A DNA stretch of 64,000 bases from Fimbriosthenelais zetlandica (Eukaryota): contig OZ365118.1 in assembly GCA_977030845.1 (NCBI GenBank), positions 21,514,001-21,578,000 on the forward strand. Reading direction: 5' to 3'. Position 1 is the first letter of the stretch, and each line of letters opens with the position of its first letter. Under the pieces are notes generated by a model, which was not told the origin of the DNA, did not search any database, and was given only the letters and a program-made list of their open reading frames with translations. The position numbers and the translations under genes are program-made. Below are positions 1,922-25,900 of the stretch, one piece after another.

Positions 1922-4633
<2,712 letters not shown>

Positions 4634-4648
4634 GTTTACGGCTTGGGT

Positions 4649-4667
4649 AAAAGAGGAACCGGAAGTG
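4649..4667 (-). promoter_or_regulatory. RPS3 5'TOP/TCT-type start (TTCCTCTTTT) with adjacent ETS motif CCGGAAGTG; shared bidirectional promoter with CTSO
   Basis: Minus strand reads CACTTCCGG-TTCCTCTTTT about 15 nt upstream of the RPS3 ATG. A pyrimidine-tract start is typical of ribosomal protein genes. Confidence 0.7.
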
Positions 4668-4697
4668 AGCGAGCGGTGGATTGTGGGTAGAGGAAGC

Positions 4698-7057
4698 ATG
4701 CAGACCAAAACATACCAGTGCTTACTTGTCATCTCAGTTTTTTCATGTTTTTACGGTTTTAAAACACCGTCAACCCATGAAACTGCATCAGGATGGAGAA
4801 ATGGCCATTTTGCACCCACGGAGAGGTCATCTGTTCTCCTGAGTGAGAGATTTAAAGTGTTTCATGAACATTTTAAGAGGCCATACCGCAATGGAAGTAG
4901 GGAGTACCAACGGAGATACGAGGCCTTTCAGGTGGGTGTGTCTGTCAATGAGAAGTGTTCTATAAGTTAATTAAACCGGGATCGCTAAACTATTCTAGTC
5001 CTGATGTTTAATAACATTCAAAGGAAAGGTTTAACGCCCCTAAAGTCTGCTAGTGGACCTTGATAAGTTCCCTGCATGATGCTTAGTGGGCCTACTATCT
5101 TATTCCTTTGTTAGAAATGATGCAATTTCATTGATTGATTTTGTTGAATTAATTTCTTGTTTTACAGGTAAATCTCAAGCGCAGTGATGTGTTAAATAAA
5201 CTACGCAGACATATTTCCAGTGCACAATATGGCATCACCAAATTCTCTGATATGACACATGAAGAGTTCAAAGGTTTGTATTGAAAATATTTAGGGCCTA
5301 TATAGTAAGCCTATCTTGAAAACTTGGCCTAAATTTTGTCATGACTCATAAAACAGGCAGTGACACAAACTTGGTGATCACAAGGTGTACACTTGGATAT
5401 CACTTCCATATCACAACCATTCTGATAATAAATATTTTCTTTCAGCAAAATACCTATCAGGATTGTCTGGGAGGAATGGGACTCATCTGCTCAAACAAAT
5501 GAAAGACTCCAGTCACAATGGACCAAACCTGCTGGCTGCTCATAAACTGTTCACCAACAGTGCCTTAAAGAAAATGTCACAGTCCAAAAGCATTCCGTCA
5601 AGTATGGATTGGTGAGTGAAATGTCTGATATCATACATGGGAGTATAGATAATCTATGCCGGATTAATCTCAAATAATTTGAGTTAAAGATTTTCTCTAA
5701 ATTTTACAGGAGAAACTATGGTAAGGTGACCGATATCAGGGATCAGAAATCATGTGGAGCATGCTGGTAAGTCCCTCCACCTTCTTCTAAATGATTATAT
5801 TCCCCCCAAAAATATTTATTTCATTATCAGTCCGGATAATTATTCTGCCTAAATTTGCTGTAGTTTCTTGATTCTTCATTTCTGTCTTTAAAATATTATA
5901 AGTTGAAAAGAACATTGTTCCTTGTCAGGGCATTTAGTGTGGTAGAAGCCATAGAGTCGATGGCAGCCATTACATCTGGTAAGCTGGTACCACTGAGTGT
6001 ACAGGAGGTGATAGACTGCTCTAACACGTACGATCACTCCTTGTGGGGGTGTAAAGGTGGAGACACGGGCAGAGCACTGGACTGGCTCAAACAGGTGCTA
6101 TATCTAACCTACCAACACTCAATTAAAGTACTCAAGTACTCAATTAAAAGAAACATTTCAATTTTCTTTTCCTGCAATTTGCCTGTGTTCAGGCTACTGC
6201 TCAGACAGTTTTTGTTAAATTTTAAGGGCCTTATCACCATGGTCTTGAGATATAAGTAATTTTAACATTTTTCTAATTAACAGACAAAGACACGGCTGGT
6301 TCCCTCATCAGACTACCCCCTGACAGACAAATCTCAGAACTGTAACCTGGACGATCCTACAGCCCACGGGGTGGCTGTTACCAGCTACAACAGCTCCAAG
6401 TATGCATCGATTTTAAAAATAACATTCTTTAGATTTAATTGTAAAACCCCTAGTTTAATAAGAGTGTAACTTGATGTTTCAGTCTAGTCGCCCATGAGGA
6501 CCTGATTCAGCAGTACGTCAGTAAAGTGGGACCTGTGTCAGTGTCAGTGGACGCCACCTCGTGGCATAACTATCTGGGTGGTATTATACAGTACCACTGT
6601 GGTGAGAACCCTAACAACCACGCCGTCCTCATAGTGGGCTACGATAAAACTGGTAAATAAATTATATAATATACAGCTTAATATGATCCACACAGATCCA
6701 AACATTCATATAGCACAGAGCCACATCGATTACAAGACATTGATTTCATCCCACAATTACCTGATTTTTAATTTTCTTTTTTTTGTAGGAGATATTCCTT
6801 ACTATATTGTGAAGAATTCGTGGGGGAATGATTTTGGTGATGACGGGTACATGTACATTGCCATGGGTGGCAATGTCTGTGGTGAGCAAACACACTATTC
6901 TCAGTTATACCTATGTTGTAAATCAATGTACATAAAAGGAGTTAATTTTGGGACGATTAATGAAAGAAATCTCGAGTGAAATATTTGAATAATTGATATG
7001 TAAATGACTGTTGTAGGTATAGCTGACGAGGTGTCTACCGTGGCTGTGGATGTGTGA
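4698..7057 (+). CDS. CTSO: Cathepsin O-like papain-family cysteine protease, ~382 aa
   Basis: Exons 4698-4931, 5168-5273, 5446-5611, 5710-5766, 5929-6094, 6284-6399, 6483-6652, 6789-6881, 7017-7057 (1149 nt, in frame). Signal-like N-terminus, ERFNIN-like propeptide and GITKFSD; catalytic QKSCGACW, NNHAV and KNSWG; the motif SWHNYLGGIIQYHC is typical of cathepsin O. Confidence 0.9.
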
Positions 7058-7926: not shown

Positions 7927-10900
7927 CTATGTCTTAGCGATCCTTGTGGATCTCTTTCTTTGCGGCTTGTCCTCCCCATCACTATCACTCAGTCGTCTCT
8001 TTTCACTCTGTTCACTCTGAGTATTATCAGTCAATGTTTTGAGATCATTATTCTCAGTTTCAGGATCGGCCTGTGAGGTACCATTACAAGTTTCTGTCTT
8101 TGAACATTTAAGATTATCCAGTGAAATATTAACAGAAGCTCCTTGTAAAGCATCACTGGTATTAGAGCTCTGGTCACAGCTCCCCTCACTCTTGTCCTCA
8201 GTTCTTGTATCTGAATCCTCGTTCTGCACCAAGTCCTGATCACAGAAGTTGAGTTTGCGTGTGAGTTTATCTGGTTTAGATGCCGGTTTTGGTGTGGAGA
8301 GTGTACTGTATTTCCTACCTCTACTCGTGCTAGCCTTCACCAAGTCTGGACTAGCTGAGCGGGCCATGGTGGGTAACTTAAAGGCCTTCCTCACTTTAGC
8401 GGGTATAGAGGAGTAGAGAGGAGTGACGGGCGTGTGATCTGACATCTGTGACACCTTGTAGGCTTTAAGTCGCTGTAGAGATCGCTTCCTGGCTAGTACG
8501 GGATCATCATCATCTCCATCATGGCCGGGTGTGAGGGGTGTGTGGGGGGTGGTAGGTACGTCAGTAGAGGTGAGGCTATGAGCTGATGGCGTGGCTAGTT
8601 CACCTCTAGTTGAGCTGCTCATGGAGGTCCGTGGAGTGACTCTCGTCTTGGTCTGTGATCGTGGGTACACCACAGATCTGGTGCTAACAATGACAGGTTT
8701 TGACATGGTGCGGGGAGTCTCCTGAAGCCTGGACACCATGCTAACCCGGGGTACCGACTGAAAAATAAATACAATATCTTAATGCAATGAATTCCTTTCA
8801 CATTTCAAGATTTATTCATTTACTCAAGTTGAAAACTGATGTTTTAAATGGAGATTTGTATCAGATATGTGTTATATTCGATATTCAGATTTTACAAGTT
8901 TATATTTCAAAGGAACAGTGAGTTCGATGGTAATAATTATAACAGAAAGCTATGACAGAAGATGACAATATACCTGCGGTGTGTGGAGGTTGTGGCTGGC
9001 GTTGTTCATCACTGAATGAAGTCGCTCTTTCATCTCTACCACAAATGATCGAGTGTTCTGAAAGAAAATTAAATAAATTCAGATTTAAAATCAGATAAAT
9101 CACCTATTTTTTAGCATTGTTGATGTAGATGATATGTCGTTAAATAGATGATGTGAACTCACCTTAACTTTGTTCTTTAACTGGTCTAGAGCTGTTCTGA
9201 TGTGAGCATCTTTAGGGTTGGTTGTGATGTGTGTGGTTTCTGTAATGGTCAGTGTGGGTATACGGCTCCGGCCAGCCATCTCTGACCGCCAGGACAAGCT
9301 GGACATGCTGACCACTGAACACTCCTTCAGTACCTCCTCTACTCCGTACATCTAGACACAAATATTTAACTTTAAAATTATAGAAAACTAAAAGAGAAAA
9401 TCAGTTAAACAGCATATATCTCAGAGATATTCAAATCAAGATATCAGGCTACCCAGGTTTGTGAATGTAGGTCTTACAAATTTAAAGAAATAGATGAGAA
9501 ATAATTCGCAAGAAAACTTCCAACTTACGGAGGTTCCACCCCAGGCCTTGACCGCCATCAATTCACCATTAACATCAGCTATGTACACTGTCTGCACTTG
9601 TCCCTCGTCTCCACTGTTAAAACAAAAACATTACTTCTTAAATTCCTCATCTCGGCAGAAATGTGAATCACTTATTTAGAGTATAAAATAGGAAATCGAT
9701 TCATACCTGGCTCTGTCATAGGTGGAGACTGGAGAGGCGAGCACGACTATTCCTACACAGTCCACCTCCCCATACACCGCCTGAAAACCTGCACCCACCT
9801 CCCTGTAGTCTGTCACCTGATAATAATAATAACAGATATAATTAACATCATACTTATTATTAAATTATACATGTATACATTGTTAGATCACAAAATATCC
9901 CTACATTTAGGGTGGAGGTAATGGTGCTAAGTTCCAGTCATTTGGCTTTTTTTGGCTTGGAGTTGTTGAAAACCTATGTACATAGAATAACCCCAGAATA
10001 AAATGAAACAAAAAAAAAAAAAATAATGAACATGACACAGATTAATGAAGCTAAGAGATACATGTTAAAGATTAAGCAGGTAGGTGACTAAGGTACATAC
10101 TTACCTCTCTAGGTTCATAGATCAGATCTAGGAGGTTATCATCTATAGGGACATTCTTATAGCGCGTCATCCGCTGACCTGATAACGCCGCTACCGTGTT
10201 TCCTTTCATTCGTCCCCTGAAAATAACAAATTGTTTTCATTAGCAAATAAGTCTTCATTCAACACCTGTCCGTTTGCAAAATCTTACGGAGATCTATCGT
10301 TTCTGAACTATGATAAGTGAAATAGAAGTTTACAATATCATTTAAGGACGGTATATATATTATAGAAAAGCCTATTTCTGTCTCTCTACGTACTTGGACT
10401 CTCCGGCAGAGAGATGGTAGATTAGGAATCGTTTGCCTTCACTCAGCATCTCCCTGATGTCATCAGAAGGTCGCCATATAGTCAGCACTGTGTCTAAAAT
10501 ATTAAAAAATACATTTCCATGGAAATGCTAAATCAGATACATTCCTTCATATTCGGTCAATATATCGAAAGCTAAAAGCTTTTTAATTCTAACTAAAATG
10601 AAATTTGTATATAAACTTACTTGATTTGGAATCTATATCCCTGTTGGAACAGCCGGCGACTCGCACTTTCAGTAAAGCAGTTACATTTCTTTTCGGGTTC
10701 TAACCAAAAAATATATATCAATATTAAAGATTATCTATTCCCTGCAAGGCATATCAAGTTGGGTGCTACAATTAATTACTTTTAAAGCCCTTAAATGTCA
10801 ATAAATTTGGAAGAGAATCCAGAACAAACCTTTTCTTCGAATTGCTCGAGGTGTGTAGTGAATGCAGACTGCATTTCAGTGTGGAGCAGCTCCTGTAGGC

Positions 10901-13900
10901 TGCGCTGATGGTCTGTGAGCAGCTCCATCTGGTGAGATGTGAGGAGTGACTCTACACTACCCTGGTCAGTGGCGGCCTCTAGTGCTTCATATATCTCCTC
11001 CCCTGTACTCCACTCACTCACCTCCTGTCTACTGTACTTCCTACCTCCCCGCCGACTCCTCAACGATCGACCACCTACAGCAAATAAAGCAAACATTTAT
11101 ATATAAACTTTATCAAAATTTATCAAAAATATATTAATGTTAGTCTATGTTAACAATACATCATACTGAAAACAAATAATAATGTATTATATATACTAAT
11201 TAATACATAAAGGAAAATAAATCTTTAAAGAAATAAAGGAATAAATAATGTATACTGACCTGTGCCGCACGCTCTCTTCTCAAACTCGGTCTGCACCTTG
11301 CTGTAGATGGTCTCTAACTGTCTCTGACGCGCGCTCTCAAACCTACCACTCACTCTCTCCTCAGCGCGCTCACTGCGGAACACTGTCCCTCCATCTGGTG
11401 TCCTCTCCATGTACTACAGACAGACAGATAGTTACATGTAGATAGATAGAGATAGAGACAGAAACGGATAGATAGATCCTAGATAGATAGGCCTACATAT
11501 AGATGGAATGATTGATTCATGTGAATGAAAAGACAGCACCGATAGATAAAGAATTAGGCCAATATTTATAATGGAATGAATGAATGAATGAATGAATGAA
11601 GTAATGAATGAATGAAGTAATGAATGAAGTAATGAATGAAGTAATGAATGAAGTAATGAATGAATGAATGAATGAATGAATGAAGTAATGAATGCATGAA
11701 TGAATGAAGTAATGAATGAATGAAGTAATGAAGTAATGACTGACCTGTAGCGGGTAGATCCGTGTAACGACCACGTCCACACAGCTGACCGTACCACCGT
11801 CAGAGTAGAGGGATGAGAGAGGTAGAGGAGGAGGCTGGGGGTGGGTGTGGTAACCTAACCTGGTGAACCATGAGGCGCGACGACAACAGTTACCACTCAC
11901 CTTTAACATGGTGTCNNNNNNNNNNNNNNNNNNNNNNNNNNNNNNNNNNNNNNNNNNNNNNNNNNNNNNNNNNNNNNNNNNNNNNNNNNNNNNNNNNNNN
12001 NNNNNNNNNNNNNNNNNNNNNNNNNNNNNNNNNNNNNNNNNNNNNNNNNNNNNNNNNNNNNNNNNNNATAATATAAGGTAGCTGTACATGTACCTGAACT
12101 GATTAACTGATTAACTGTCTACCTGTTAATGAACCATTACCTGTAGAGGAGGTGCAGCGTCCTGGGATCCGGTCAGCTCAGCGCTGTAAACCATGACTTT
12201 ATCACCGACTCTCAGCCGGCCTTGACTGACCAGGCGGGTCAGAGCGGGGTCCAGTACGGCCTTAATGGGGTACCAGCCGTCCGTTAACTCTACTACTGCC
12301 TGTAATGTCAAATATTAAATACCAATAATCATAACTATGTTAAAGTCAGGGCAATTAGTCATTTAGTATATTTATTCTCAAGCTGAAATTTAGAAATGAA
12401 ACAATGAGAAATAGAGTAGATACATACAGCAAGATGGATGGGGTTTTGACCATCTCCAGCACCTGAGTTGTCTTTGGGTGTTTGTGGGACTCTGATAGCT
12501 GAGTTGTCTTTGGGTGTTTGTGGGACTCTGATAGCTGAGTTGTCTTTGGGTGTTTGTGGGACTCTGATAGCTGAGTTGTCTTTGGGTGTTTGTGGGACTC
12601 TGATAGCTGAGTTGTCTTTGTTTGTTTGTGGGACTCTGATAGCTGAGTTGTCTTTGGGTGTTTGTGGGACTCTGATGGAGTTAGTGTGAGGGAGACTGAC
12701 TACAGCAGACACACACAGAACCAGTACTTTAGCTGGCGTGTCATCCCGCTCAAAAATCTTCTTGATTGCGCTCCTTATAAAAAAAAAAAAGAAAAGCAGT
12801 TCATCAGTTACATTTATAAGACTTTGACTTATCGAACTCACATTTCCTGACATTTTAGTATTTTTTTTACTATGTATGTCCTTGTACATGAGGGAATGTG
12901 CCACTGTCTAAACTAAATAGTAACTTAAACCATATGTTGAATAAATTAATCTTTCTTTGGAGACCACCACTTCTTGGTCAATCAGAAGCAAAATCCATCA
13001 TTCAACTACAATCAGAAACCGATAAGAGCTGTAAAATAAAAGATCAAAGCAGGCGACATAAATCAATATGACATGGCATATTTGTGTAGCAATATCGAGC
13101 CACTCCAATTAAAATGACGCGGGGAAGTAGAGACATAATAAAGTATGCGTTATGACTGAGAGAGCTCTGAATGATAAGGTAAGAAGGGAGTGATAGAGGC
13201 AGGGCCAGTGAGAGGGAGAGAGACCTCAGATAGAGACCAGGATCAGTGAGAGGTGGAGTGAGTGGAGATTATTGTCATGACCACAGTCCATGTTGATCAC
13301 AGTAAGTGTTTGTTAGTAACTCAGTCTGGCAGTTTGTCCTGTCACAAGTCTGGGTCTCCTAACAGTGGGAGGTCTGAGATAATGAGAGAACTGTAAAGAA
13401 AACTACATTAGTGGATTGATTAGTACTCTAAGGCAACTATCACTAGATCAACTCAAACACCATAACTAGCAGGTAAGATTTTTACCATCCAGTTCTTTTA
13501 AAAAAACTTTTTTTAAGAATCAGAACTAAGGCAATAACTTGTACTTAAATATTAAGTTTCGTTAAGCTTTATCCAATGAATCTTTTTTTTAGAAACAAAA
13601 TTACCTCTATGTATCTTAATATCTATATTTTGTTAATTACAACCAAGGCAACAAGGTACCTACATCTCAATATGTTTCATAACATCAATTAGAGAGATGG
13701 TTAATAGGACGGTTACATCATAGTAAATCTGATTGATTAGAGCCCCGATAATTCCTTCTAAATATACTAGATCTAGTAATCAGATTCAGAACAATAGTTT
13801 CTATATTCAGTTCCTGACTTGGCACACCAAGTAGGAGCATGGAGGACGAGGTAGGGGAGTGAAAGGGAATGGAGGGTAGGAAGGGTTGGAGGTAGAGGGG

Positions 13901-16900
13901 AGGATTAAGTTTCACATCTCATTACCAAGTTGATTAGGGTCACAAAGGTGAGCAATATGATCCTTTACTTGGTTTATTCTACATATTATAAACCAGGACA
14001 CGAGCTGGTGGTTTAACTCAGGGATACATGTACTCTAGTTCAGACTAATCTCTACTGACAGACAGCCAGTCTATCTTAAAACAGGTAAGAACATTAGTCA
14101 TTCCATCTCTAATTTAGGAGCTTTTCAGTATAAAATCTTCAAGCCCTTCCAGGTTTAAGTATAGGTATCTGGGATATCAAAACTATGCTGAATATGTCAA
14201 CAGAAACTCAGCTTATTCATGGGATAATCCCCCTGATTCAGTGCCTTTCCTCTATATTCCCTATATCAATATTTTAAAAGTCAGGCCAAGTCAGTCCTCC
14301 ATATACAACCCTGGAGCTATTAGGTACCACAATGGGTTGTATAAGCAAGAACAAACATTGTCATACAATCCTAAACACATTGTAAAGTCATAAATGATGT
14401 TCTTCAGGTCATTGCTGAATGGTTGGGTTGTAAAGTGAGGCCTGGGTTGGGCTGCTTTATTTCTATGTAAGACTAAGCTCTTCCAGTTTACCAATATTAA
14501 GTTAATTTCTTTCAGAGAACCATCACCATGCTGGGAGTACCCAGTACAGCAGACTCTGAGAAGTCAGTCAGTTTAGAACCAGGAGGAGCAGAGAGACAAG
14601 AGGATGAGGATAAAAGAGATGAGTTCAGGAGGAATCATGGTATTTTATGTCGCCTGTTCTGTGAGGGCAGCACGACCGCCATGAGGGAAGTGTTTAACAC
14701 CATCCACCCTCCCATCTCACTCCACAGCCGCCTCACCAAGGCCCAGATCACCAAATCACTGCGCCGACTACAGCAGCAAGGATCCCTCACCCCCGATCAG
14801 TGGCGCTACCTCTACCCGGGAGAGAAATCCACACCAGTGTCAACTAACTTTAACAACAGACTACTGCGGGTCCTTCTCCAGTATATATGCCATCTCTCAC
14901 CTCCCTACCCTAATGGTTGGGAGGGCATCCCTCTATCAACTGATACCAGTCTATCAGCTGATCTGGTCCGGCTAGACTACATCAGGAGGAGTCTGAATAA
15001 AATGAAGGGAGAGACCAACAGTAACGATCTAGACAGGTACTCTAACCTGCTCATTGAGGTGCTCACTCGTATAGGAGGACCTATAGCCAGGATCAAAGCT
15101 GATACCATCATGACGGAGGCCACAAGCCAGGAGGAGATGGACAGGTACAAGGAGGAAGTCAGTCAGTGGCAGAAATACCACGACAAGATGGTCAAGGCAG
15201 GTACAGACCCCATCAGTCCTCAGTCTGATGGTCACTTACTGGTCAAGGAGTTTACACTGCCTCAGATCACCACTACACATGCGGGGGGTGATGGACCAGG
15301 AGTCGACCAAGATGTGGAGGGTCAGAACAAGGCATCTAACAGAGCTGGGCGTTTATCACTGCCGGGGGCTGGAGCTCACCGCTCCCGATCTAACAGCAGG
15401 GCTGGATCCGGGCATAGAACTCCAGGTAAAGTTTACATTCAATAAGATTATACCAGAATTCTATGTCAGGTAGCAAACACATACCTTACTAGAGCTATTA
15501 TAGAGCTTTTATCAGCCTGAATCCCAGTATCAATATAGAATTTATAAGCAAGTTTAGCCACTTCACATCAAGTACTAAACCTCATTCCATCTTGTCTATG
15601 CAAAGGTCTTGGTTGTAGCCAAGATCCTTTATGGGATGACTCTTTGAACTGAGTAAGTTATGATTGTCTGCCACTCAGCCTCGTTTCATTATCTCTTTGA
15701 CTTGAAGTAGCCACCAACATGCTGCACCAGGACCGGGCCATCTTAGTGGAGCATCATAAGCTACTGACTGAGAACATCCGTAGTGACGTGGTGTTGTTAC
15801 GTCTGGTCATGGCTGGTTTACTCAGCCATGAGGAGAAGAACAGTATCAACCTGGCCACCCGTAACGTGGACCGTATGAAGGCCTTACTCAGACTACTGCC
15901 CACTAAACCCCGCCCAGCATTCACGGCCTTCTGTGAGGCCATCAAGTTTAAATACGTCTCTATATACGAGCAACTGATGAGGGCCAAGAGAACGGCCATG
16001 GAAAAACCAGGTACGGGGAAGATTTATATTACATTTCACAAAATTTAAAGGCAATCAATGCAAGAAGAAAGTATGGAGGTTGAAAATAGCAAGAAGAGAT
16101 TATGAAGTGATAGGATAAGGTTGACATTTTCATTTCAGATGATATTACTGAAGCTAATATGAATCTAAAATCAAACTACAAGACCAAGATGAGACCGGTA
16201 TCGTGGCATCCACGGGCCAACGTTAATGTCTGTCAGTTCTACACGCCACTCTACATCACCGATGGACAAGGGTCAGTATTAACTCTCAGTTTTCTTTCAG
16301 AGTTTAAAGCCTGTGTGATTAGATTGTAAAAAAGTTTGAAATTAGTTTGGAAAATATAACCTTTTCAAGATAAAAATACAGGTTTTCAGTAATATAAGTA
16401 ACCTATTTTCAGGAATGAATACAGCCCCAGTACTGTATTTGAGAGCAGACGGAGGGCTGTTCCAGGACGTGGGAGGAGGATGCTAATAGAGGGAGAGAGT
16501 GGGAGTGGTAAGAGCATTATCTGTCGCTACATCACCCGTGAGTGGGCTAATGGAGAAGGCCAGCTCTCAGACTACAGATTGGTGTACTACATCGATGTTA
16601 AACTCCTCAAAAACAGCCTGGGTGAGACCATGCTAGCCATCAACCACGGAGAGGCCTTCAATAAGACAGTCCGTGATATCTACCAGCTGATAGACGGCAA
16701 CCAGAGAGAGGTCATGTTCATACTGGACAGTCTGGAGGATCTCAGTCCAAAGGTGAGAGATGAGATCATGGACCTGATCCAGGGTAAGCTGTTCCCTGAC
16801 AGTAGTGTAATGGTGACTATAAACAGTATGTATGTGACGAGGGACCTGATGAGGTACTTTGACAGTAAGCTAGTGGTCATGGGCCTGTCACTGGTCAGCC

Positions 16901-19900
16901 TGGAGGACTTCGTCATGCGCTACGCTCGCTTGACCAAAACTCCAGAGGATCTGTACTTCACTCTGGTGGAGAAGATGATGGGGGAGGGAGGGATGGATTC
17001 AGATGTACAGATCCTAGCACAGAACCCGCAGCTGTGTATGTGTATGTGTCTGCTAGCAGAGACAGGCCAGTCATTGAGTATAGAGTCAATGACTCAACTA
17101 CTACAGGCCTTCCTCCTGGCCATTCAGAACAACTACTGTAGGAGGAACCGTCTAGAGATGGTGGATGGGGAACTACCTGAGGTGGTACAGAATCTGACCC
17201 AGGACATTGAGGAGATGGCGTGGAGATGTATGCACCAGAATGGAAGCTTCTTCACGTATGACCAATCTGACGAGGACGACTCTCAATCTAACAAGTACGC
17301 CTTTGGTTTTATAGAGAAGCGTTCCTCCTCCACTCTCCTCACACTCCGCCAGGAGTTCTTCAGTAACCGAGTCTTCCAGGACTTCATGGCAGCCCGGGTT
17401 CTGTGCCGGCTGGAGGTTGAAGACTTCATGGACCATGTCCAGGACCTGGTTCATGATAATTACTACTGTAACGTCACTAGATTCCTCTGTGGTCTCCTCA
17501 AAGACGACAAGAAAACCACGAGACTGTCAACCATCATGAAGGAGTTAGCTCAGGTGAATGTAACTCATTGGAGAGGCTACAGCTCTCACCACAACACACC
17601 AACATCCGTGGATGGTAGATTAGATACCAGCCTGGACACGGGGCTGATGGAAGGACGACTAGGAGACTTCAAACTCAGCCTCGAGTGTATCAATGAATGT
17701 CATGAACGTGACGATATGATTAACATTATATCACAATCCCTGCCTACAAGGATGTTTACCATGAACAAGAAAACCCTGAGCCACGGTGGGATACTAGGGC
17801 TGGCTAAATGTATGCTGATGGACGAGTGCCACATCAGTGAGCTGGAGTTCAGACTTGATCACTTCGCCCGGTATCACAGTAAAGCCCTGCTCATCCTGGC
17901 ACAGAGCATCAATGACAGCCAGTACATGACGAGCATGAAGCTACACTGGGTGGATGCTGACCTGCTGGCGGGCTTCCTGGCTCATGTCTTCACCTCACCA
18001 TGTCACATTACAACCATCACATGTAGGTGTGAGATAAAGACAGAGACAGAGAACCGAGTAGCAGCAGCAGTATGGTCTAACATGAGACAGGCTGGTGAGA
18101 ACATGTCCTCAGTACAGAGCTTCACCTTGACTAACTGTACTAATAAAGCCATGGTGTCCTGCGTGCTGCGCTCCCTCCCCATCACCATCCAACACCTCAC
18201 CCTGACGAGCTGCTCGCTCGACCTGGTCTCAGCTCAGGAGGTTGAGATGAGGCTGACTAAATCATCCCACCTACAGACGCTGGACCTTACTGGTATCAAC
18301 ATACATACAGTAGACTTCAACCATCTCAGCGCTGGACTCAAGATGAGTGAATCCATACAGGAGTTGAGCCTAGCTGAGGTCCAGCTGGGAGGCATGGCTA
18401 TAGATTCATTAGCCGAGGCTCTCAAGTTTAATCGCTCCCTTGTACACCTTGACTTGAGTCATAATATACTGGCAGACTCAGCGTGTAAGTCGCTAGCTTC
18501 AGCCTTACCTCACACTCATCATCTAAAGACATTGAAGTTACACGGAGCGTCCATGACTAGATCAGGGAAGGAGGGGCTGAGAGAGGGAGTGAGGAGGGAG
18601 GGGCTCAGAGAGGGAGTCAGGGAGGAGGTCACCCTACATGGGATGAACTCTATACAATGTAAGTCTCCATCCTTTACTTTGAGTAAGGAAAGCACCCTTA
18701 TACTAAACCAACTCTCACAGACAAAGAGCAAAGTACTCTCTGATGACTAACACTATCACAACGCACCAAGTCTAAAGTTTGTATTGTATAAATTAACTGT
18801 ATAAATACCAAGACTTTTGGTCACAAATATTGAGGATTATATTGAGTTATTGTGAACATAATATCATACATGACTGAAAAAGAAAGGCGAGGATTATTTA
18901 TAACCTGGATCAGTAAGGAGTCTCACCTCTGAGTGTTGTCCACCTCTCGGTCGTACCTGTACTTTAACTGTAGCATCACACGGTCCGGTGTAAGACTCCT
19001 GTAATCATATCACAGAAATAAATATCCTACCACATCCTTATATTCATTCTTATGTCTCGGTTAGCCTCTAATTATTGGTTAGGAAACAAATTAATTAATT
19101 GATTATTATTATGGCAGTAGTGGGTATTGTTAAGCCAGGGAAGATGTCTACGAACCTGCCACCGAATATTTGAGGGAAGGCGGTTTCCATGGCAGCCAGT
19201 TTCCACACGATCCATCGGTAATGGTTGTAGATCCATTCACGATTTGTCAGCTTAGGATCCACACCATCCATGTCGAGAAACGCACTGAAAATATCATTTA
19301 CAATTTTCATTCATAACTGATTTCAGATATTGAGTATTACATTTAAAGTGTAAAATATAGTTGGGAACGTATATATAAATGAATAGCTTACTTGCAGAAC
19401 TCCTCTTTGCCAGCTGTGCTTTTATCGCCCCATATTAACAGTGCACCATCACCCACCCTGACACTGTTAGACTCGTACGTTACTTTATCCTCGTAGAACT
19501 CCGCGGATGAGAAGCGGTAGTCTTCAGCATTAGCAGCACAGACGGTCAGAACGGAATCTCTCACTCCAAAACAGTAGATCTGAAAACAATAAACTTAATT
19601 AAACAAACATGAACAATTTCCAGGTAAATATTAATTCAATGTTTCACAGATTTTGTAATAATTATAATAATTAAGTTTGCTCACCTGCTGTTTGGTGTAG
19701 GATTGAGGAGTCAATCCACCTACTGCTAGTTTCAGCTGTACACCTCTCTCACCCTGTCTCTGTGAGAACCATCCTCCAGGCTGGGGTTTAACTCCCCCTC
19801 TCTCCCTCTTCATCTTGATCCTCTGAGCCTGACCCACCTTAGCTTTCATTCTAGCCTTACAAACCTCTTCAGCCACTTTCACTTTCGTTTTCTCCCTGAC

Positions 19901-22900
19901 TTTCACATTGTCTTCTTCCTTTATTTCCTCTTCAGGAAGGTTTGAAAGCTCATCACAGTTCTTGTCGAGATTTTCTAAGTCAGTTGTACTGAGGGCTTCC
20001 ACTATAGAGTCCTGTTCATGTCCCCAGTCTACCAACAGTTCCTCCTCCAATGATTTACCTATCACAGTTGACTCGTCCCCGCTCCCCTCTCCTCCCTCCC
20101 CGCTCCCCTCTCCTCCCTCCCCGCTCCCCTCTCCTCCCTCCCCGCTCCCCTCTCCTCCCTCCCCGCTCCCCTCTCCTCCCTCCCCGCTCCCCTCTCCCTT
20201 ACTTTTCTTCTGTACGGGGGTGATGAAGCCAGCCTCGGAAGCTGACCGTTTAGGGGTGGACTTTACTGGGGTTTTGAAGCCCCCTGTAGATATAGGAGTG
20301 GATGCTTTGAGTGGGGGTTTGAAGGAGGAGGCGGGGGTGTCAGTCTTGTAGGGTGTTATAAAGCTGGAGCTATCAGTGGACTGTTTGACGGGGGTTGACT
20401 GGTGGATGGGGTGTGAAAGCCTGACCTGGTCACCCGGGGTGGAGGGTTCAATCAGTCGATCATCAGTGACAGCATTGTGGTAATCCTTATAACTGGTAGG
20501 TCCCTGCCAGCTGGTGAAAATATAATACAAATACATCAATTACTAGTGAATGAAATCATTTTAAAAGCAATGATCATTTTAGTGGACTTAACATATTCAT
20601 TAATCTCAATTAAGCTCTTAGTATATATGGTAATAATTATGGATTCTGGACTACCCTAATGATTAAGTTGTACCCACCTATAAATGGGTTGATTGGAGCT
20701 CCTTTTCTGATTCTGTAAATCTTTGTCTGGAGCACTGATGAGTGGTTTAAGAGAGGTTGATCTCCTGGATACCAAACACCGGTCAGATAAAAACGCTGAA
20801 AAAAAGCAAATAAATGTTACGATTATTTATCTTGTGAATTCATTTGAACATTGCTATTTCTCTAGAATGTTGATAGAAAATCAGTGAAGCAGTCTATAAG
20901 TTAACAGAGATTGTTTTATTAGTATTGATATCAGATTATGGCTGAAGGATATGAAGGGACCCTACCTTCTGGAGTGGAGGTCACTGCTTTAAAGGCCGTC
21001 ACTTTACTAGGGAACCTGGCAGTTGAAGTATTGCTTGATAACTCAGGATTCTGCCGCTGTCCAGAATGTACAAACGAGGATTCCTCGCCAAAAGTGTCAT
21101 CACAGTCCGCCAGTAAAGCCTTAGAACTTTCACAGATTTCCTTCATCACCTCCTGATCCTCATCTAGTTGGTTTTCCTCAGTTCTGTCATCGCTCTGTCC
21201 CATGGTGAGTTCACTCTCTGTCAGGAATTGTTTGGCTTTTTTCATGGCATCCTCAGAGATGTTGACAGTCCTTCCACCAGCAGTGGAGAACCCGGTGAAT
21301 GTGAGAGATGGAGGTGCCACCTCACCCCTGTCATTATCAGCAGATCTCACCATACTCAGCGAATCTTTACAGACCTTTACTTGCTGCCCACCAGCAGTAG
21401 AGAATACATCCAGTTTGGTTTTGGATTCCTCTTTAGTTCTGGGATCTTTTTGGTTTGATTCATCATCAATTTCTGGATTAGATTCCAGCAGTTTTTTGGC
21501 CTTCATCAGAGCGGAGTTTGAAATGTTCACAGATTTTCCACCAGCTGTTGAGAAGCCCAGGCAGCTGTGGTCACTCTTCATTGAGGATTTCTCCGTGAAT
21601 GGGATGATGGCTGTCAGTTTATCTGAAGTACCACTCGTCATTTCTTGCATCAACCTCTCCTCATCTGATCTGAGATGTTTCTCATCTTCAGAGAAGAATT
21701 GCTTAACCTTTCTAAGGGCTGTTTCTGAGATGGAGACTTTCTTCCCACCCGCGGTCGCGAATCCTAAGAAAGTAGCAGGGGTAGCTTTATTGAGGTCCTT
21801 ATTTTCCACATCTTTAATTTCATTTTGTTGTTCGTTTACATCCACATCCTCATCACCTAGAGCAGAAAGCTTGCTTCTTGCTTCAGTCAACGATTTTTCC
21901 GACACTTTAACTGACTTTCCACTTGCAGTAGAGAAGCCTACAAAGGATGAAGCCTGGGGAGTCTCCTCCATGAAGCCATCTCTTTCCACTCCATAATCTG
22001 AAGGTGTTTCTTCCATTTTTGTAAGTAGAGACTGTGATTGTTTTAAGCCATTTTCTGAAATATCCACACGTTTACCAGAGGCGGTTGAGAAGCCTTGGAA
22101 ATGAGATGGTGGATTGTTCTTTTCTACAGATGGTTGTTCATCATTTTCAAGCAATATTTGGGCTTCATTTAAGGCACACTCTGATATTTTCACCTCTTTA
22201 CCAGAAGCAGGAGAGAAAGCAGGGAGCTCTACCCCCGGTACCTTAAAGTCAATGCAGTCATTTCCAACAAATGATTCTTCATTATTTTGCAGTAACAATT
22301 TGGCTTCGTTGATGGCCTTTTCAGATACATTCACACTTTTCCCAGAAGCAGTTGTAAATGCTGGACATTTAGACAAAGCTTCACCAGTGTCGGTTGTTCC
22401 AGTATCTCCTTCCACCGGTTCTTCTGTTACATCCTTTTCCAGTGAAAACTCAGATTTAGACTTAGTAATTGTTGAAACATTTGTCAATCCATCTGACAAA
22501 TCAGAATGAGTCATGGATGACATCTCTGCTATAGGGTATGGTTGTTTAAATTCACCACTAGTAGAACCTGACGTTTGCTTTACTTTAAGTTCAGGCACTA
22601 CACAGTCAGTAATCTCATCCTTTTCCAGAACTTTCTTTGAATTCTCGCCGGAGTAGAAACTAAAGCTGGTGTTTTCTTGTAGCGTGCCTGAGTTTGATGA
22701 TAAATACTGGCCTGAACTTCTGGTATGTTGGTCTACACGGTTCATTTTACTCTCTGGAACCTCGGGTACTTTCAAATTCTCCGACGTAGGAAGAGTTTCT
22801 TTCACAATCTTCGCTTCATTTGTTTTTTCAGTAGAGTTTTGACGAGCAGCAGCAGGGACTGTAAGTTGATTGATCCTCTGACCATCTTGTGGACTAATTC

Positions 22901-25900
22901 TCCTGTCCTCATCTTTATTTACATCACTCACTGCTGCTTCCTCTACAATGTCCTCTTCAGTGAATATATGTTTCACTTTCATTAAAGCCTCAGTTGACGT
23001 GGCTAAACTTTTACCAGAGGCTGTCTTGAATAGAACTGGTCCTGGTCCATTCACAGCCTCATCCCCGCCACCTAATGATACCCGCTGTGTTGTTATTAGA
23101 TCATCTGTTGTATTGTTACTTGTATGATTGGCGCTGAGTATGTTTAGGTGATCGTCAAATTGAGAATTATCCTCTAGAAGTAAAGCCTGAGCGGCGTCAG
23201 TAGCTTCAGTGATCTGAGTGTATGTGAGGTTATCTAGACTGTCATTGAAGGCCTCGTTATACTGATCAGTGACATTCATGTTAGAATCATTCTGATGTTC
23301 ATTCACACCAGTCTCTACTTCATCCTTGTCTACACTGGTCTTCACTTTATCTTCTATTAACTCTACTTTCTCTGGGTGTTTATTGAGTTTTTGATTTATA
23401 CAATTGTCTTCTTTGTTCAGTCCATCCTCTTTCTGTTGCAGTACATCCTGTTTCTCTATTGTATTAACATGTATAGCTGCCTTTATATCAGTTTTGACAA
23501 CCATCCGTGGACGTTTAAAGGGTCGGTAACCTTTAGGTAACTTGCTGTAATCTTTTTTTGGCTCGTTCTGTTTCAGAGATGCCATGTTTGTTGCTTTATC
23601 TGTATCTCTCTCAGCTATGACAGGTACACTAGGTTCTGTCTGAGAACATCCCTCAATGTTTTCCTCCTCAAACCATTTGCTGAATTTGGCCGCGGCACTG
23701 CTGTCTATTTTTAGCTGTTTGCCAGCGGCAGTACCAAACCCCGGAGGCTGTCTGTCTGTATTGTCATTGACAGGTTCCTCACCAAGATTAAACACAAGTG
23801 GAGGGTCAGTCGTGGACATACTCCCTCCTGGTTCGTCCTCAAACCATTTCTCAAACTTTGACAGGTTGGTCTCTGATATTTTTACATCTTTTCCACGTGC
23901 AGTTTTAAATCCAACAAAAGTAGGCGGGATGCCATCAGAATAGGCAGTGTTTCCTTTGTCATTCTTTGTATCACACTTCTCTTTTACCGTCACTTCAGTC
24001 TGATAATCATGATGGGTATCTTTGATCGTACTCCCAGTTTCGACCATTCCTTTATCACAATCTTTTCCTGATTTCTCCAGGGGAAGCTCTTCTTGGAACC
24101 AGCTTCCGTACTTGGTCCACTTTGACTCGTCAATTTTGAGATCATTACCTGCAGCTGTTTTAAAACTAACAAACTGAGGGACGGCAGATCCTTCTACAGC
24201 CCCACATGTGGACTCAGGTGGATCCTTGTCACATGTTGGGAGTAATTTATCACAATCATTATCAGTCTTTGCACCAGGTTTGTCCATTTCAGGGACTCTA
24301 GCATCCCCTAGTTCTGAGCCACATTCTGTCTTATTTTCCAGGTGCCGGTAATGGTTTGGGAATTTCATATTATTCCTGATATCACTGTTATTGTTCACGC
24401 ATGATTTGGCTGAAGGTTTAGACGACTGATGGACATTTAAATTCTTCAGACATGAGATTTTTGAGGGAGCACTTTCAGCAGATTTAGGTTGATCTTCATC
24501 GAACCAGGTTGAGTATTTCTTTACAGTAGCCTCGTCCAGGTTTAACTTCTTACCACTGGCGATCTGAAAGCCAACACACGTGGAAGCTTGGTGAACCTGA
24601 GACTCAAATGTTATTACTGGTATACCACCATCCTCCTCTACAATTCTGGGCACATGTTTTACTCCTTCATTCACACTTTCCATATTAGTTTGAGCTCCAT
24701 CATCTTTATAACTCGGTGTAACAACAGTTTCCTTAACCTTTTCTTTCTCAGAGGCCACGGTTAGAGAGAGAGTAAAGTCTGTGTCAAACTCTTGCTCTAT
24801 TCCGTCCATCATCCTGGCCGTCTCATCGCCATGTGCTTGTTTATCTTGAAGCCCAGTCTCCAGGTTGGATGTAGCCTTGTTTTCTATCTTATCATGTGAA
24901 CCATCTTTGTTGTTTTGAGCCTCCTTTCTCTCTCCCCGACCATCACTCGGCGGCTGAGCGCTGTAATTTGAGATCGCCTGGAAGTTGATGACTTTTTTAG
25001 CGGAGTCATTAGAGATTTGGTTGCGAGACGGATACTGGAATCGTCCGGGTTTTCTACGTAAGCCCACTGATCTCCCCTTCACAGTGCTCGTCTGGGCAAG
25101 TCTATGAGTACCAGACACTGGCGACATTCTGGGGCTCACTGTTCTAGATTTATTCTCACTAATACATGTGTTAGTTTTACTGTGTTTGGGGCTCACTCGT
25201 GACATAGGTGTTCTCTGAGAGGGGCTGTCTTTGGTACCAGTTTGATTAACAGTGGAAACACTCTCAGTAGCTGAGAAAATAGATTCCATAACTGAAGGGG
25301 AAATCTGGGAAAATACAACATCGTTATTTCCCTCTTGGCTGGCCATAGATTTACCAGGTGTTTTCTGCAAGGCGGGGCTTTTCCTCGGTGCCTCATCAGG
25401 CACAGTGGTTCGTTTTTGTACGTGACAATCACTATGGGTATTTTCCGCAGTTCTTTCTGCAGGCAGTTCAGTTCTTATTGTGGTTGTTTCCTCTACTACA
25501 TTAGTAGCCATGAGGGAGGTTTCAGACTTGGTCACAGCATCACAGATGGCGTAGAGGTGTGTGGGGGAGAGCTGGGTAAACTCCACGTCTGGACGCTCCT
25601 TCCTGTCTACACTCACATTCTGATCTTGTTCCATGCTCGACTTATCATTTCCATCTTCCTCACTTTTCACCTTTATTTGGTCCTCAGTAATTTTGTCACC
25701 ACTTGTCGCATTCATTTGGTCTACATTCACCTCTTCACCCCCACCTGATCCAGTCTCTATATTCCCCTCACATTCCTCCACACTTTCAGCCATGATGTGT
25801 TCCACCATTTTGGAGGCAGCACCTTGTGATGTTAGACTGTGTCGTAGCGAGGTCCGCTTCCTGGCTACTTGTTGTCTCAGGTATGATCGTGAGGGAGGAG

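What the first reader, a model, noticed from the sequence alone, without database searches (positions are those of the whole stretch)
12774..18926. Complete HEPN-CARD-NACHT-LRR immune receptor gene nested antisense inside a BRCA2 intron
Seen in sequence: a 4-coding-exon gene of ~1222 aa fills almost all of the 6.15-kb BRCA2 intron between ...DNTQR and SAIKK..., in the DNA-binding-domain region. Established: DZIP3-type HEPN domains occur at the N-terminus of invertebrate NLR-like proteins, and CARD-NACHT-LRR is the inflammasome-type layout. Inference: combining a nuclease-fold effector and a CARD in one NLR is unusual. As I recall the human gene, there is no intron at this exact position (human splits at KYR/YD), so the host intron may have arisen or expanded with the insertion. 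Nesting could couple innate-immune induction to BRCA2 elongation or splicing through transcriptional collision.
Basis: partly seen in the sequence, partly recalled or inferred. Interest (0 to 1): 0.8.

Follow-up and report, generated by a model that had tools for sequence, protein, structure and literature searches.

The report
Ancient immune-type gene nested inside BRCA2
An intact HEPN-CARD-NACHT-LRR receptor gene lies antisense in one BRCA2 intron of this probable annelid genome, and the same gene sits in the same intron in other annelids, a brachiopod and a ribbon worm, so the pairing is ancient, not a recent insertion.

Summary
Four canonical + strand exons (14528-18750) encode a 1222-aa protein without stops. 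Pfam finds HEPN_DZIP3, CARD and NACHT, and a PDB profile search confirms RI-type LRRs. The gene lies wholly inside a 6153-nt intron of a - strand BRCA2, between the helical and OB1 regions.

The interpretation needs correcting:
- This is not a lineage-specific insertion. The gene is the single-copy orthologue of a Spiralia-wide group annotated in Lingula, Capitella, Owenia, Tubulanus, molluscs and Macrostomum.
- The gene occupies the same phase-2 BRCA2 intron, antisense, in three unnamed relatives and in Owenia, Lingula and Tubulanus.
- In the bivalve Ruditapes the same intron exists but is about 390 nt and empty. In Mizuhopecten and Lottia no BRCA2 exon lies within 10 kb of the orthologue. 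The intron therefore did not arise with the insert.
- The HEPN domain has the DZIP3 fold but lacks the catalytic His of the Rx4-6H motif, so it is probably not an active nuclease.
- HEPN_DZIP3 fusions with CARD, NACHT and LRR were already tabulated in 2013.

dN/dS of about 0.1 against the closest relative shows purifying selection. No RNA runs could be listed, so transcription and any coupling to BRCA2 remain untested. I found no paper reporting the conserved nesting; SYN-TIMP is the precedent for such pairs.

The parts
14528..15425 (+). NLR coding exon 1: start codon, DZIP3-type HEPN domain (aa 64-205) and a low-complexity linker
   Evidence: Pfam HEPN_DZIP3 E=2.3e-22. The AF2 model has pLDDT 92.8 and matches DZIP3 residues 386-568 at TM 0.72. 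Donor GT at 15426.
14514..14515 (+). Probable splice acceptor 12 nt before the ATG, implying an unlocated 5'UTR exon upstream
   Evidence: A polypyrimidine tract plus AG precedes the ATG in both the window and species A (L009). This is inferred; there is no RNA evidence.
15711..16010 (+). NLR coding exon 2: CARD
   Evidence: Pfam CARD E=1.9e-9. It is the best conserved domain: 86% identity to species A with dN/dS 0.07. The closest solved CARD is RAIDD/CRADD at 8.4e-10.
16139..16271 (+). NLR coding exon 3: 44-aa linker before the NACHT domain
   Evidence: It is in frame with AG/GT borders and is conserved in L009, L010 and L011.
16413..18750 (+). NLR coding exon 4: NACHT (Walker A GESGSGKS, Walker [10 protein letters not shown]), the NOD helical/winged-helix module, RI-type LRRs and the stop codon
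   Evidence: Pfam NACHT E=5.1e-16. PDB profile hits to NLRC4, NLRP and RI. Motifs shown.
12774..18926 (-). BRCA2 host intron (phase 2, inside an Arg codon), 6153 nt
   Evidence: GT at 18926-18925 and AG at 12775-12774. Same position and phase in species B, Lingula, Owenia, Tubulanus and Ruditapes; the donor side also matches in species A and C.
18927..18998 (-). 72-nt BRCA2 exon ([24 protein letters not shown]), 176 nt from the NLR stop codon
   Evidence: Orthologous exons found in L009, L010, L011, L018, L019 and L021.
12428..12773 (-). BRCA2 exon starting [11 protein letters not shown] (start of OB1), containing a 6x tandem 12-aa repeat. The 3' end is inferred from frame continuity with the next exon.
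   Evidence: Orthologous exons in L012, L018, L019 and L021.
19156..19284 (-). BRCA2 helical-domain exon
   Evidence: Pfam BRCA-2_helical E=5.8e-21; sequence.
12141..12299 (-). BRCA2 OB1 exon ([10 protein letters not shown]...)
   Evidence: Pfam BRCA-2_OB1 E=3.8e-18; sequence.

Best explanation
The + strand gene is this genome's single orthologue of an old, single-copy spiralian NLR. Its domain order is DZIP3-type HEPN (catalytically degenerate), CARD, NACHT/NOD, RI-type LRR. The genome is probably an annelid.

Its antisense position inside the BRCA2 intron that splits ...R|SA(I/V/L)KK is inherited. It dates at least to the common ancestor of annelids, brachiopods and nemerteans.

What is shown:
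- The gene model is intact and under purifying selection.
- It is orthologous to annotated genes in several spiralian phyla.
- It sits in the identical host intron in seven further genomes.
- The same intron is empty in a bivalve.

What is inferred:
- The protein works as a CARD-signalling STAND switch. LRR-controlled NACHT oligomerisation would cluster the CARDs and recruit a CARD caspase or adaptor.
- The HEPN domain, conserved but lacking its His, would act as a non-catalytic dimerisation or regulatory module.
- The nesting has persisted mainly because a guest gene in an intron of an essential gene cannot be separated by ordinary rearrangement without breaking the host (structural lock-in). 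Selected coupling is not required.
For: Gene and domains.

Selection: against species A (L009), dS is saturated (pS 0.71) while dN is 0.25, giving dN/dS of about 0.11 overall and 0.07-0.16 in each domain where dS could be estimated.

Single copy: the best own-genome paralogue is 27% identical. The HEPN_DZIP3 model finds only this locus, against at least 101 NACHT hits.

Orthogroup:
- The profile search gives full-length single-stretch hits, named.
- Every full-length member scanned has HEPN_DZIP3, CARD and NACHT.
- The gene tree recovers a mollusc clade (100/100) and an annelid clade that holds the window (97/92).
- The members share an Asn in place of the winged-helix His.

Nesting:
- L009, L010/L012 and L011.
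- Lingula L018 and Owenia L019, by annotation and tblastn.
- Tubulanus L021, by tblastn.
- Identical intron position and phase in all of these.

Molluscs: there are no BRCA2 exons within 10 kb in Lottia or Mizuhopecten. The Ruditapes intron is about 390 nt and empty.

Dead HEPN: the register was fixed with coral and amphioxus proteins that carry RNxxxxH. The window reads IRRSLNKM.

Annelid origin: the mitochondrial gene order and genetic code (the ground pattern is from my own knowledge), and the tree.

Precedent for lock-in: the SYN-TIMP nested pair is conserved across Metazoa (PMC2825198).
Against: - There is no transcript evidence for the window's species. The TSS, poly(A) site and possible overlap with the BRCA2 exon 176 nt downstream are unknown.
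- No CARD partner was identified.
- The NACHT lacks an obvious sensor-1 Arg and the canonical winged-helix His, so its nucleotide cycle may be atypical.
- Passive lock-in cannot be told apart from selected coupling with these data. The guest did leave the intron, or never entered it, in molluscs.
- Species A does have an Rx4H-compatible His, so a residual activity cannot be formally excluded there.
Confidence: 0.7

Rival explanations
1. The nesting is kept by selection because the two genes are functionally coupled. Either shared chromatin or promoter control switches both on with replication or DNA damage, or antisense transcription through the intron modulates BRCA2 elongation or splicing. 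This would link genome surveillance to CARD-mediated caspase activation.
For: - The same intron and orientation occur in three phyla.
- The NLR 3' end always lies close to the 72-nt BRCA2 exon: 176 nt in the window, and 0.4-1.4 kb in the others.
- The NLR is better conserved than its host's BRC exon in the same species pair, 47% against 28% identity.
- The CARD profile is closest to RAIDD, the caspase-2 adaptor of the DNA-damage PIDDosome.
- In the scallop, where the gene is not in BRCA2, nibrin lies about 8 kb away.
Against: - There are no expression data at all.
- Molluscs keep the orthologue outside BRCA2, so the protein does not need the nest.
- The RAIDD lead rests on a modest score gap, 42 against about 32 bits.
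- Nested pairs such as SYN-TIMP persist without known coupling.
Confidence: 0.2
2. One reading: a lineage-specific insertion of an expanding immune gene into BRCA2, which created or expanded the intron.
For: Occupied introns are 6-17 kb, against about 390 nt for the empty bivalve one, so size does track occupancy. From my own recollection, the nearest human BRCA2 intron lies 10 codons upstream (KYR|YD); this was not checked here.
Against: - The intron has the same position and phase in a bivalve without the guest.
- The guest is present in annelids including Owenia, in a brachiopod and in a nemertean.
- There is no close paralogue in the genome, and this is the only HEPN_DZIP3 locus.
Confidence: 0.03
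3. The HEPN domain is a working RNase effector, released on NLR activation, as proposed for canonical DZIP3-type HEPN-NACHT proteins of oysters and corals.
For: - Strong Pfam and fold membership.
- The domain is under purifying selection, dN/dS 0.12.
- 194 of 202 pearl-oyster DZIP3 HEPN proteins keep Rx4-6H (PMC9646362).
Against: In the canonical register (coral YRNTVYGH, amphioxus FRNNNYGH) the window has IRRSLNKM. The His is absent in 11 of the 12 orthologues in that alignment, and the Arg is gone in molluscs and Owenia.
Confidence: 0.08
4. The ORF is a non-expressed relic or a gene-prediction artefact.
For: No RNA run was listed.
Against: - A 1222-aa frame is open across four canonical splice junctions.
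- dN/dS is about 0.1 with saturated dS.
- Intron positions are conserved.
- RefSeq models, some with isoforms, exist for orthologues.
Confidence: 0.02

Closest known systems
Annotated orthologues: Lingula anatina XP_013410021 ('NLRC3-like'; called LaNLRC in PMC11508797), Capitella teleta ELT89336/R7TE54, Owenia fusiformis CAH1778043, Tubulanus polymorphus XP_074650995, Mizuhopecten XP_021374728, Lottia XP_009051454, Haliotis XP_071116058, Macrostomum PAA48443
   Same: They share the HEPN_DZIP3-CARD-NACHT(-LRR) order and a length of about 1100-1290 aa. The one-domain-per-exon layout is the same, as are the degenerate HEPN motif and the winged-helix Asn. In Lingula, Owenia and Tubulanus the BRCA2 host intron is also the same.
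   Different: Identity to the window is only 22-30% in the NACHT-LRR exon and 34-41% in HEPN. The mollusc copies are not within 10 kb of BRCA2 exons. None has been characterised, and the one paper citing the Lingula protein mentions neither HEPN nor BRCA2.
Canonical DZIP3-HEPN-NACHT(-LRR) proteins of bivalves and anthozoans (PMC9646362, PMC8260672; for example Stylophora XP_022809028)
   Same: An N-terminal DZIP3-type HEPN is fused to NACHT and LRR.
   Different: Those proteins are large, fast-changing, lineage-specific expansions that keep RNxxxH and lack a CARD. This gene is single-copy, is conserved across phyla, has a CARD between HEPN and NACHT, and has lost the His.
Vertebrate NLRC4 and NOD1/2-type CARD-NACHT-LRR receptors
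   Same: CARD, then NACHT/NOD, then RI-type LRR. The NOD module aligns to NLRC4 over about 350 residues at E=1e-17.
   Different: This gene has an extra N-terminal HEPN domain, an Asn in place of the winged-helix His, and no evidence of orthology. Its CARD is closer to RAIDD and Apaf-1 than to the NLRC4 CARD.
SYN-TIMP host/guest gene pair
   Same: The guest gene lies antisense in one intron of the host, and the arrangement is kept across phyla for more than 500 My (PMC2825198).
   Different: The genes are different. The BRCA2-NLR pair has so far been seen only in Annelida, Brachiopoda and Nemertea, and is absent from the molluscs examined.

Membership tests
NLR (NACHT-LRR STAND NTPase) | NACHT domain above the Pfam gathering score, with Walker A GxxGxGK[ST] and Walker B hhhhD | tested here: met
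   PF05729 scores 59.4 bits against a cut-off of 26.7. GESGSGKS and MFILDSLED are present and conserved in the orthologues.
NLR (NACHT-LRR STAND NTPase) | C-terminal leucine-rich repeats of the ribonuclease-inhibitor type | tested here: met
   The Pfam LRR hits are sub-threshold. The orthologue profile, however, hits RI and the LRRs of NLRP3/5/14 at E=1e-19 to 1e-24 over profile positions about 567-765.
NLR (NACHT-LRR STAND NTPase) | Winged-helix signature FxHxxFQEF with the ADP-contacting His (motif recalled from knowledge of NLRC4, NLRP3 and NOD2) | tested here: not met
   The window reads FSNRVFQDF. The Asn is shared by annelid, brachiopod, nemertean and flatworm orthologues, while amphioxus HEPN-NACHT keeps the His. 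The motif frame is present but the His is replaced.
HEPN superfamily, DZIP3/hRUL138 family (PF18738) | Match to the family profile above the gathering score | tested here: met
   79.8 bits against a cut-off of 27, covering 140 of 144 profile positions.
HEPN superfamily, DZIP3/hRUL138 family (PF18738) | The all-alpha fold of the DZIP3 HEPN domain | tested here: met
   The AF2 model has pLDDT 92.8 and pTM 0.89. Foldseek against human and mouse DZIP3 residues 386-568 gives TM 0.72 and probability 1.00. No solved structure matched.
HEPN superfamily, DZIP3/hRUL138 family (PF18738) | Rx4-6H catalytic motif, usually RNxxxH | tested here: not met
   The register was fixed with coral and amphioxus members. 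The window has R153 but no His (IRRSLNKM). The His is missing in all named orthologues, and the Arg is also lost in molluscs and Owenia. The gene is a member by descent and probably inactive.
CARD (death-fold) | Match to PF00619 above the gathering score, and to solved CARDs | tested here: met
   37.9 bits against a cut-off of 23.9. The profile hits RAIDD at 8.4e-10, Apaf-1 at 1e-6, and CARD9 and BCL10.
CARD (death-fold) | Binds a CARD partner (caspase or adaptor) | not tested
   No partner was identified. CARD and caspase loci exist in the genome, but no adjacency was seen.
BRCA2 (host gene) | BRC repeats plus the helical and OB1 domains in order on one strand | tested here: met
   PF00634 E=4e-66, PF09169 5.8e-21 and PF09103 3.8e-18, all on the - strand.
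Deeply conserved nested (host/guest) gene pair | Orthologous guest in the orthologous intron, in the same orientation, in distant lineages | tested here: met
   Same intron position and phase, with the guest antisense, in the window, species B, Owenia, Lingula and Tubulanus. Species A and C match on the downstream side only. Orthology is shown.
Deeply conserved nested (host/guest) gene pair | Both genes transcribed, from opposite strands | not testable with these tools
   No sequencing run was listed for this DNA.

The most novel reading that the evidence does not exclude
BRCA2 and its guest NLR form a selected, Cambrian-age regulatory unit. The NLR, whose CARD is most like that of the caspase-2 adaptor RAIDD, would be switched with or against BRCA2 transcription. 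It would act as a PIDDosome-like death switch that reads replication stress or DNA damage, or infection that mimics them. This would make the pair a hard-wired link between homologous-recombination repair and CARD-caspase signalling in spiralians.
Probability: 0.1. Interest if true: 0.85.

Novelty: new member of a known kind. Interest (0 to 1): 0.6.

Why it matters
NLRs are usually fast-evolving, lineage-specific families. This one has stayed single-copy from flatworms to annelids. In at least three phyla it has stayed in one intron of an essential DNA-repair gene for roughly half a billion years.

That has three uses:
- It gives a clean orthologous NLR for functional work in spiralian models such as Owenia, Capitella, Platynereis and Lingula.
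- It is a natural case of a HEPN domain kept after losing its catalytic His.
- It offers a natural experiment, nested in annelids, brachiopods and nemerteans against un-nested in molluscs, on whether host/guest gene pairs are held by selection or by structural lock-in.

The conserved nesting was not found in the literature I could search. It is, however, visible in public annotations.

Tried and rejected
- RNA evidence. The look-up of sequencing runs listed no run for 14400-18900 or for exon 4, so read laying could not be used.
- Species C. The SAIKK-type exon was not found within 10 kb upstream of the NLR. That intron is over 23 kb and its far border was not reached.
- Mizuhopecten. The look-up of isoform X2 failed; isoform X1 worked.
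- Canonical HEPN comparators. A word-index search with the Lingula HEPN domain found nothing. Comparators were taken instead from the profile-search hits.
- Structure. The first AF2 run, with 4 sequences, was poor at pLDDT 56.8 and was replaced by a 16-sequence run. Foldseek against the PDB gave no significant match for the HEPN model.
- Nibrin. NIBRIN_BRCT_II was not detected in the own genome by the six-frame search, so the scallop NLR-nibrin adjacency could not be compared.
- CARD partner. No CARD hit lay next to a caspase hit, so no partner was proposed and no complex prediction was run.
- Rejected readings. A recent insertion, an intron created by the insertion, a member of a recent NLR expansion, and an active HEPN nuclease are all rejected; see the rival explanations.

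Full report
**1. What is in the sequence**

On the + strand, four exons with canonical AG/GT borders join into a 3669-nt frame of 1222 aa with one terminal stop. The exons are 14528-15425, 15711-16010, 16139-16271 and 16413-18750. Each main domain has its own exon.
- Exon 1: HEPN_DZIP3, E=2.3e-22.
- Exon 2: CARD, E=1.9e-9.
- Exon 4: NACHT, E=5.1e-16. It carries Walker A GESGSGKS and Walker [10 protein letters not shown].

The Pfam LRR hits are weak. A profile of the exon-4 orthologues, however, matches ribonuclease inhibitor and NLRP LRRs at E=1e-19 to 1e-24. It also matches the NLRC4 NOD module at 1e-17.

A polypyrimidine tract plus AG sits 12 nt before the ATG, and species A has the same feature. 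This suggests an untranslated first exon further upstream; that is an inference.

**2. The host gene**

The - strand carries BRCA2. Pfam finds BRC repeats (E=4e-66), the helical domain (5.8e-21) and OB1 (3.8e-18).
- The 72-nt exon 18998..18927 encodes [24 protein letters not shown], and its donor GT is at 18926.
- The acceptor AG is at 12775-12774, and the next exon starts [11 protein letters not shown].
- The intron is therefore 12774-18926, 6153 nt, in phase 2 inside an Arg codon.

The NLR coding span takes 69% of this intron. The 1.6 kb upstream of the NLR is unique in the genome. The NLR stop codon is only 176 nt from the BRCA2 exon.

**3. Where the window comes from**

The assembly is 447 Mb in 79 contigs. 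Contig 79 is a 15,667-bp mitochondrial genome.
- It uses the invertebrate code: ATA reads as Met and AAA as Lys at conserved COX1 positions.
- All genes lie on one strand.
- The order is cox1-N-cox2-D-atp8-Y-cox3-Q-nad6-cob-W-atp6-R-H-nad5-F-E-P-T-nad4L-nad4-C-G-M-rrnS-V-rrnL-L-A-L-nad1-I-K-nad3-S-nad2.

From my own knowledge, this is the annelid ground pattern apart from the place of trnG. The NLR gene tree agrees, placing the window in a clade with Capitella.

**4. The gene is real and constrained**

No sequencing run could be listed for this DNA, so there is no transcript evidence. The evidence is comparative.

The closest relative is species A (L009, a Logan contig). It has the same four exons with the same borders and phases. 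Between the two species:
- Synonymous sites are saturated (pS 0.71) while dN is 0.25, so dN/dS is about 0.11 overall.
- By region, dN/dS is 0.12 for HEPN, 0.07 for CARD, 0.16 for NACHT and 0.08 for the NOD helical region.
- Only exons align at the DNA level.

**5. It is not part of a recent expansion**

The best paralogue in the same genome is 27% identical. The HEPN_DZIP3 model finds this locus and no other. NACHT finds at least 101 loci and CARD at least 13.

**6. The orthogroup**

The word-index search found only three relatives, at 63, 43 and 47% identity.

A profile search of 1.8 billion representatives found a distinct top tier of single-stretch, full-length matches. Their names are:
- Lingula anatina XP_013410021
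- Capitella teleta ELT89336
- Owenia fusiformis CAH1778043
- Tubulanus polymorphus XP_074650995
- Haliotis spp.
- Mizuhopecten XP_021374728
- Lottia XP_009051454
- Liolophura
- Plakobranchus
- Macrostomum lignano

Every full-length member scanned has HEPN_DZIP3, then CARD, then NACHT.

A maximum-likelihood tree gives a mollusc clade with the chiton at its base (100/100). It also gives an annelid clade holding the window (97/92). Owenia, Lingula, Tubulanus and Macrostomum are unresolved at the base, as expected for a single-copy orthologue.

The group shares two derived features: a degenerate HEPN motif (section 8) and Asn in place of the winged-helix His (FSNRVFQDF against amphioxus FLHKTFQEY).

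The named hits outside Spiralia were of two kinds:
- coral HEPN-NACHT-LRR proteins without a CARD;
- an amphioxus model that contains HEPN-CARD-NACHT as its second half.

**7. The nesting is ancient**

In every locus fetched for the species below, the NLR is on one strand. The BRCA2 helical exon and the ...YDREVDxxxR exon lie just downstream on the other strand.

| Species | Locus | Host intron, nt | Evidence (calls) |
|---|---|---|---|
| Window (annelid) | window | 6153 | 6, 7, 76 |
| Species A | L009 | far border not reached | 11, 19 |
| Species B | L012 | about 16,900 | 20, 22, 76 |
| Species C | L011/L013 | over 23,000; far border not reached | 13, 21, 22 |
| Lingula (brachiopod) | L018 | about 7,800 | 53, 59, 76 |
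| Owenia (annelid) | L019 | about 11,000 | 54, 59, 76 |
| Tubulanus (nemertean) | L021 | about 7,700 | 57, 59, 76 |
| Ruditapes (bivalve) | L023 | about 390; empty | 64, 65, 76 |

- In Lingula and Owenia the public annotation itself shows the NLR inside the BRCA2 gene range. tblastn places the two flanking exons on either side.
- In Tubulanus BRCA2 is not in the gene list returned, but tblastn finds the same flanking exons around the NLR.
- In all of these, the donor splits the Arg codon as AG|G or AG|A, so position and phase are identical.

In contrast, Lottia and Mizuhopecten have no BRCA2 exon within 10 kb of their orthologue.

The bivalve Ruditapes has the same intron (QSQR|SSLKK, same phase). 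It is only about 390 nt long, and no NLR was detected anywhere in the 33.5-kb BRCA2 locus.

Three conclusions follow.
- The intron is older than, or independent of, the guest.
- The guest has been in it at least since the common ancestor of annelids (including Owenia), brachiopods and nemerteans. From general knowledge, that ancestor is Cambrian or older.
- Molluscs either lost the arrangement or branched off before it arose. I cannot decide between these.

In the window/species C pair, the guest's NACHT-LRR exon is 47% identical. The host's BRC exon is 28% identical over a third of its length.

**8. HEPN: the fold is kept, the active site is not**

With 16 sequences, AF2 gives a confident all-alpha model (pLDDT 92.8). 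It matches residues 386-568 of human and mouse DZIP3 at TM 0.72 and probability 1.00. No solved structure matches.

The catalytic register was fixed with canonical members among the search hits: coral YRNTVYGH and amphioxus FRNNNYGH. In that register:
- The window reads IRRSLNKM. The Arg is kept, the Asn is replaced, and the stretch carrying the His is shortened and lacks it.
- No named orthologue has the His.
- Molluscs and Owenia have also lost the Arg.
- Only species A has a His at an Rx4H distance.

The domain is nonetheless under purifying selection, and motifs such as [11 protein letters not shown] are nearly invariant. A non-catalytic role is therefore the likeliest, for example dimerisation, autoinhibition or ligand binding. 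This is an inference.

By contrast, 194 of 202 pearl-oyster DZIP3 HEPN proteins keep Rx4-6H (PMC9646362).

**9. How it probably works**

Shown: the domain order CARD-NACHT/NOD-LRR with intact Walker A and B motifs.

Inferred, by analogy with NLRC4 and Apaf-1:
- Release of the LRR lets the NACHT oligomerise.
- Oligomerisation clusters the CARDs.
- The clustered CARDs recruit a CARD caspase or adaptor.

The CARD is the most conserved part. Its profile is closest to RAIDD/CRADD (8.4e-10), ahead of MDA5, Apaf-1, CARD9 and BCL10. This is a lead, not a partner assignment.

A 2024 survey used the Lingula orthologue as 'LaNLRC' and predicted a direct CARD-CARD contact with a caspase-1-like enzyme. It did not note the HEPN domain or the BRCA2 context (PMC11508797).

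**10. Why it stays in BRCA2**

The simplest account is structural. A guest inside an intron of an essential gene can be separated only by duplication and loss, not by an ordinary breakpoint. The SYN-TIMP pair shows that such arrangements can last across Metazoa (PMC2825198).

Selected coupling is the main rival: shared control, or antisense interference with BRCA2 elongation or splicing of the adjacent 72-nt exon. The constant orientation and the closeness of the NLR 3' end to that exon are consistent with it. Nothing here tests it, and molluscs show that the protein can live elsewhere.

**11. Comparison with what is known, and novelty**

- HEPN_DZIP3 fusions to CARD, NACHT and LRR were tabulated in 2013 (PMC3710099).
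- HEPN-NACHT expansions are described in bivalves and anthozoans.
- Orthologues of this gene are already in RefSeq and UniProt.

The gene is therefore a new member of a known kind. I did not find the following reported:
- that this NLR is a single-copy, pan-spiralian orthogroup with a dead HEPN domain;
- that it has occupied the same BRCA2 intron in at least three phyla.

**12. Verdict**

Interest is moderate to high because of the depth of the conserved nesting and the natural nested-versus-free comparison it offers.

Noticed in passing
window 12470-12700 (-): The BRCA2 exon that starts OB1 contains six tandem copies of a 36-nt unit encoding [12 protein letters not shown]. One copy reads TNKDNSA. 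The repeat is inserted where other species have a short variable loop.
   Followed up: no
window 19631-20539 (-): A BRCA2-strand ORF here has a low-complexity run ([11 protein letters not shown] repeated about 6 times) and no Pfam hit. It is probably another BRCA2 exon with a tandem expansion.
   Followed up: no
window 11916-12067: A run of N lies inside the BRCA2 OB1 region.
   Followed up: no
L019 (Owenia) 3300-5550 (+) and 22543-23730 (-): The annotated Owenia BRCA2 gene range also contains a sulfotransferase gene and a 7TM receptor gene. BRCA2 introns there host several guests.
   Followed up: no
L021 (Tubulanus) 10001-18842: The annotated NLR transcript starts about 4.2 kb upstream of its coding start. 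That is beyond two BRCA2 exons (11813-11890 and 11234-11389), so the two genes are interleaved there, not strictly nested.
   Followed up: partly
L022 (Mizuhopecten) 54089-60299: In the scallop the un-nested orthologue is followed by a metallophosphatase gene and then, within about 8 kb, by nibrin (NBS1), another double-strand-break repair gene. Nibrin could not be located in the window's genome by the domain search.
   Followed up: partly
L011/L013 (species C): The orthologue has extra introns: the CARD is split in two and the NACHT is in about four pieces. Its host intron is over 23 kb and contains large + strand ORFs (1335 aa and 391 aa) with no Pfam hit, possibly a mobile element.
   Followed up: no
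P0031 (Haliotis orthologue), Walker A: The Haliotis protein reads GAPGIGQTT, so the Walker A Lys is replaced by Gln. All other orthologues examined keep GK[ST].
   Followed up: no
G000 contigs C29, C2, C3, C11 and C1: At least 101 NACHT hits were found, many in large single-exon ORFs (800-3000 aa) clustered at a few loci, for example C29:9.7-10.7 Mb and C2:0.75-0.81 Mb. This genome has a sizeable NLR expansion unrelated to the BRCA2-nested gene.
   Followed up: no
P0139 (Branchiostoma lanceolatum 'NLRC5', 2143 aa): The model reads HEPN-NACHT-HEPN-CARD-NACHT. It is probably two adjacent genes fused, and the second half has the same HEPN-CARD-NACHT order as the spiralian gene but with a canonical RNxxxxH motif.
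   Followed up: partly
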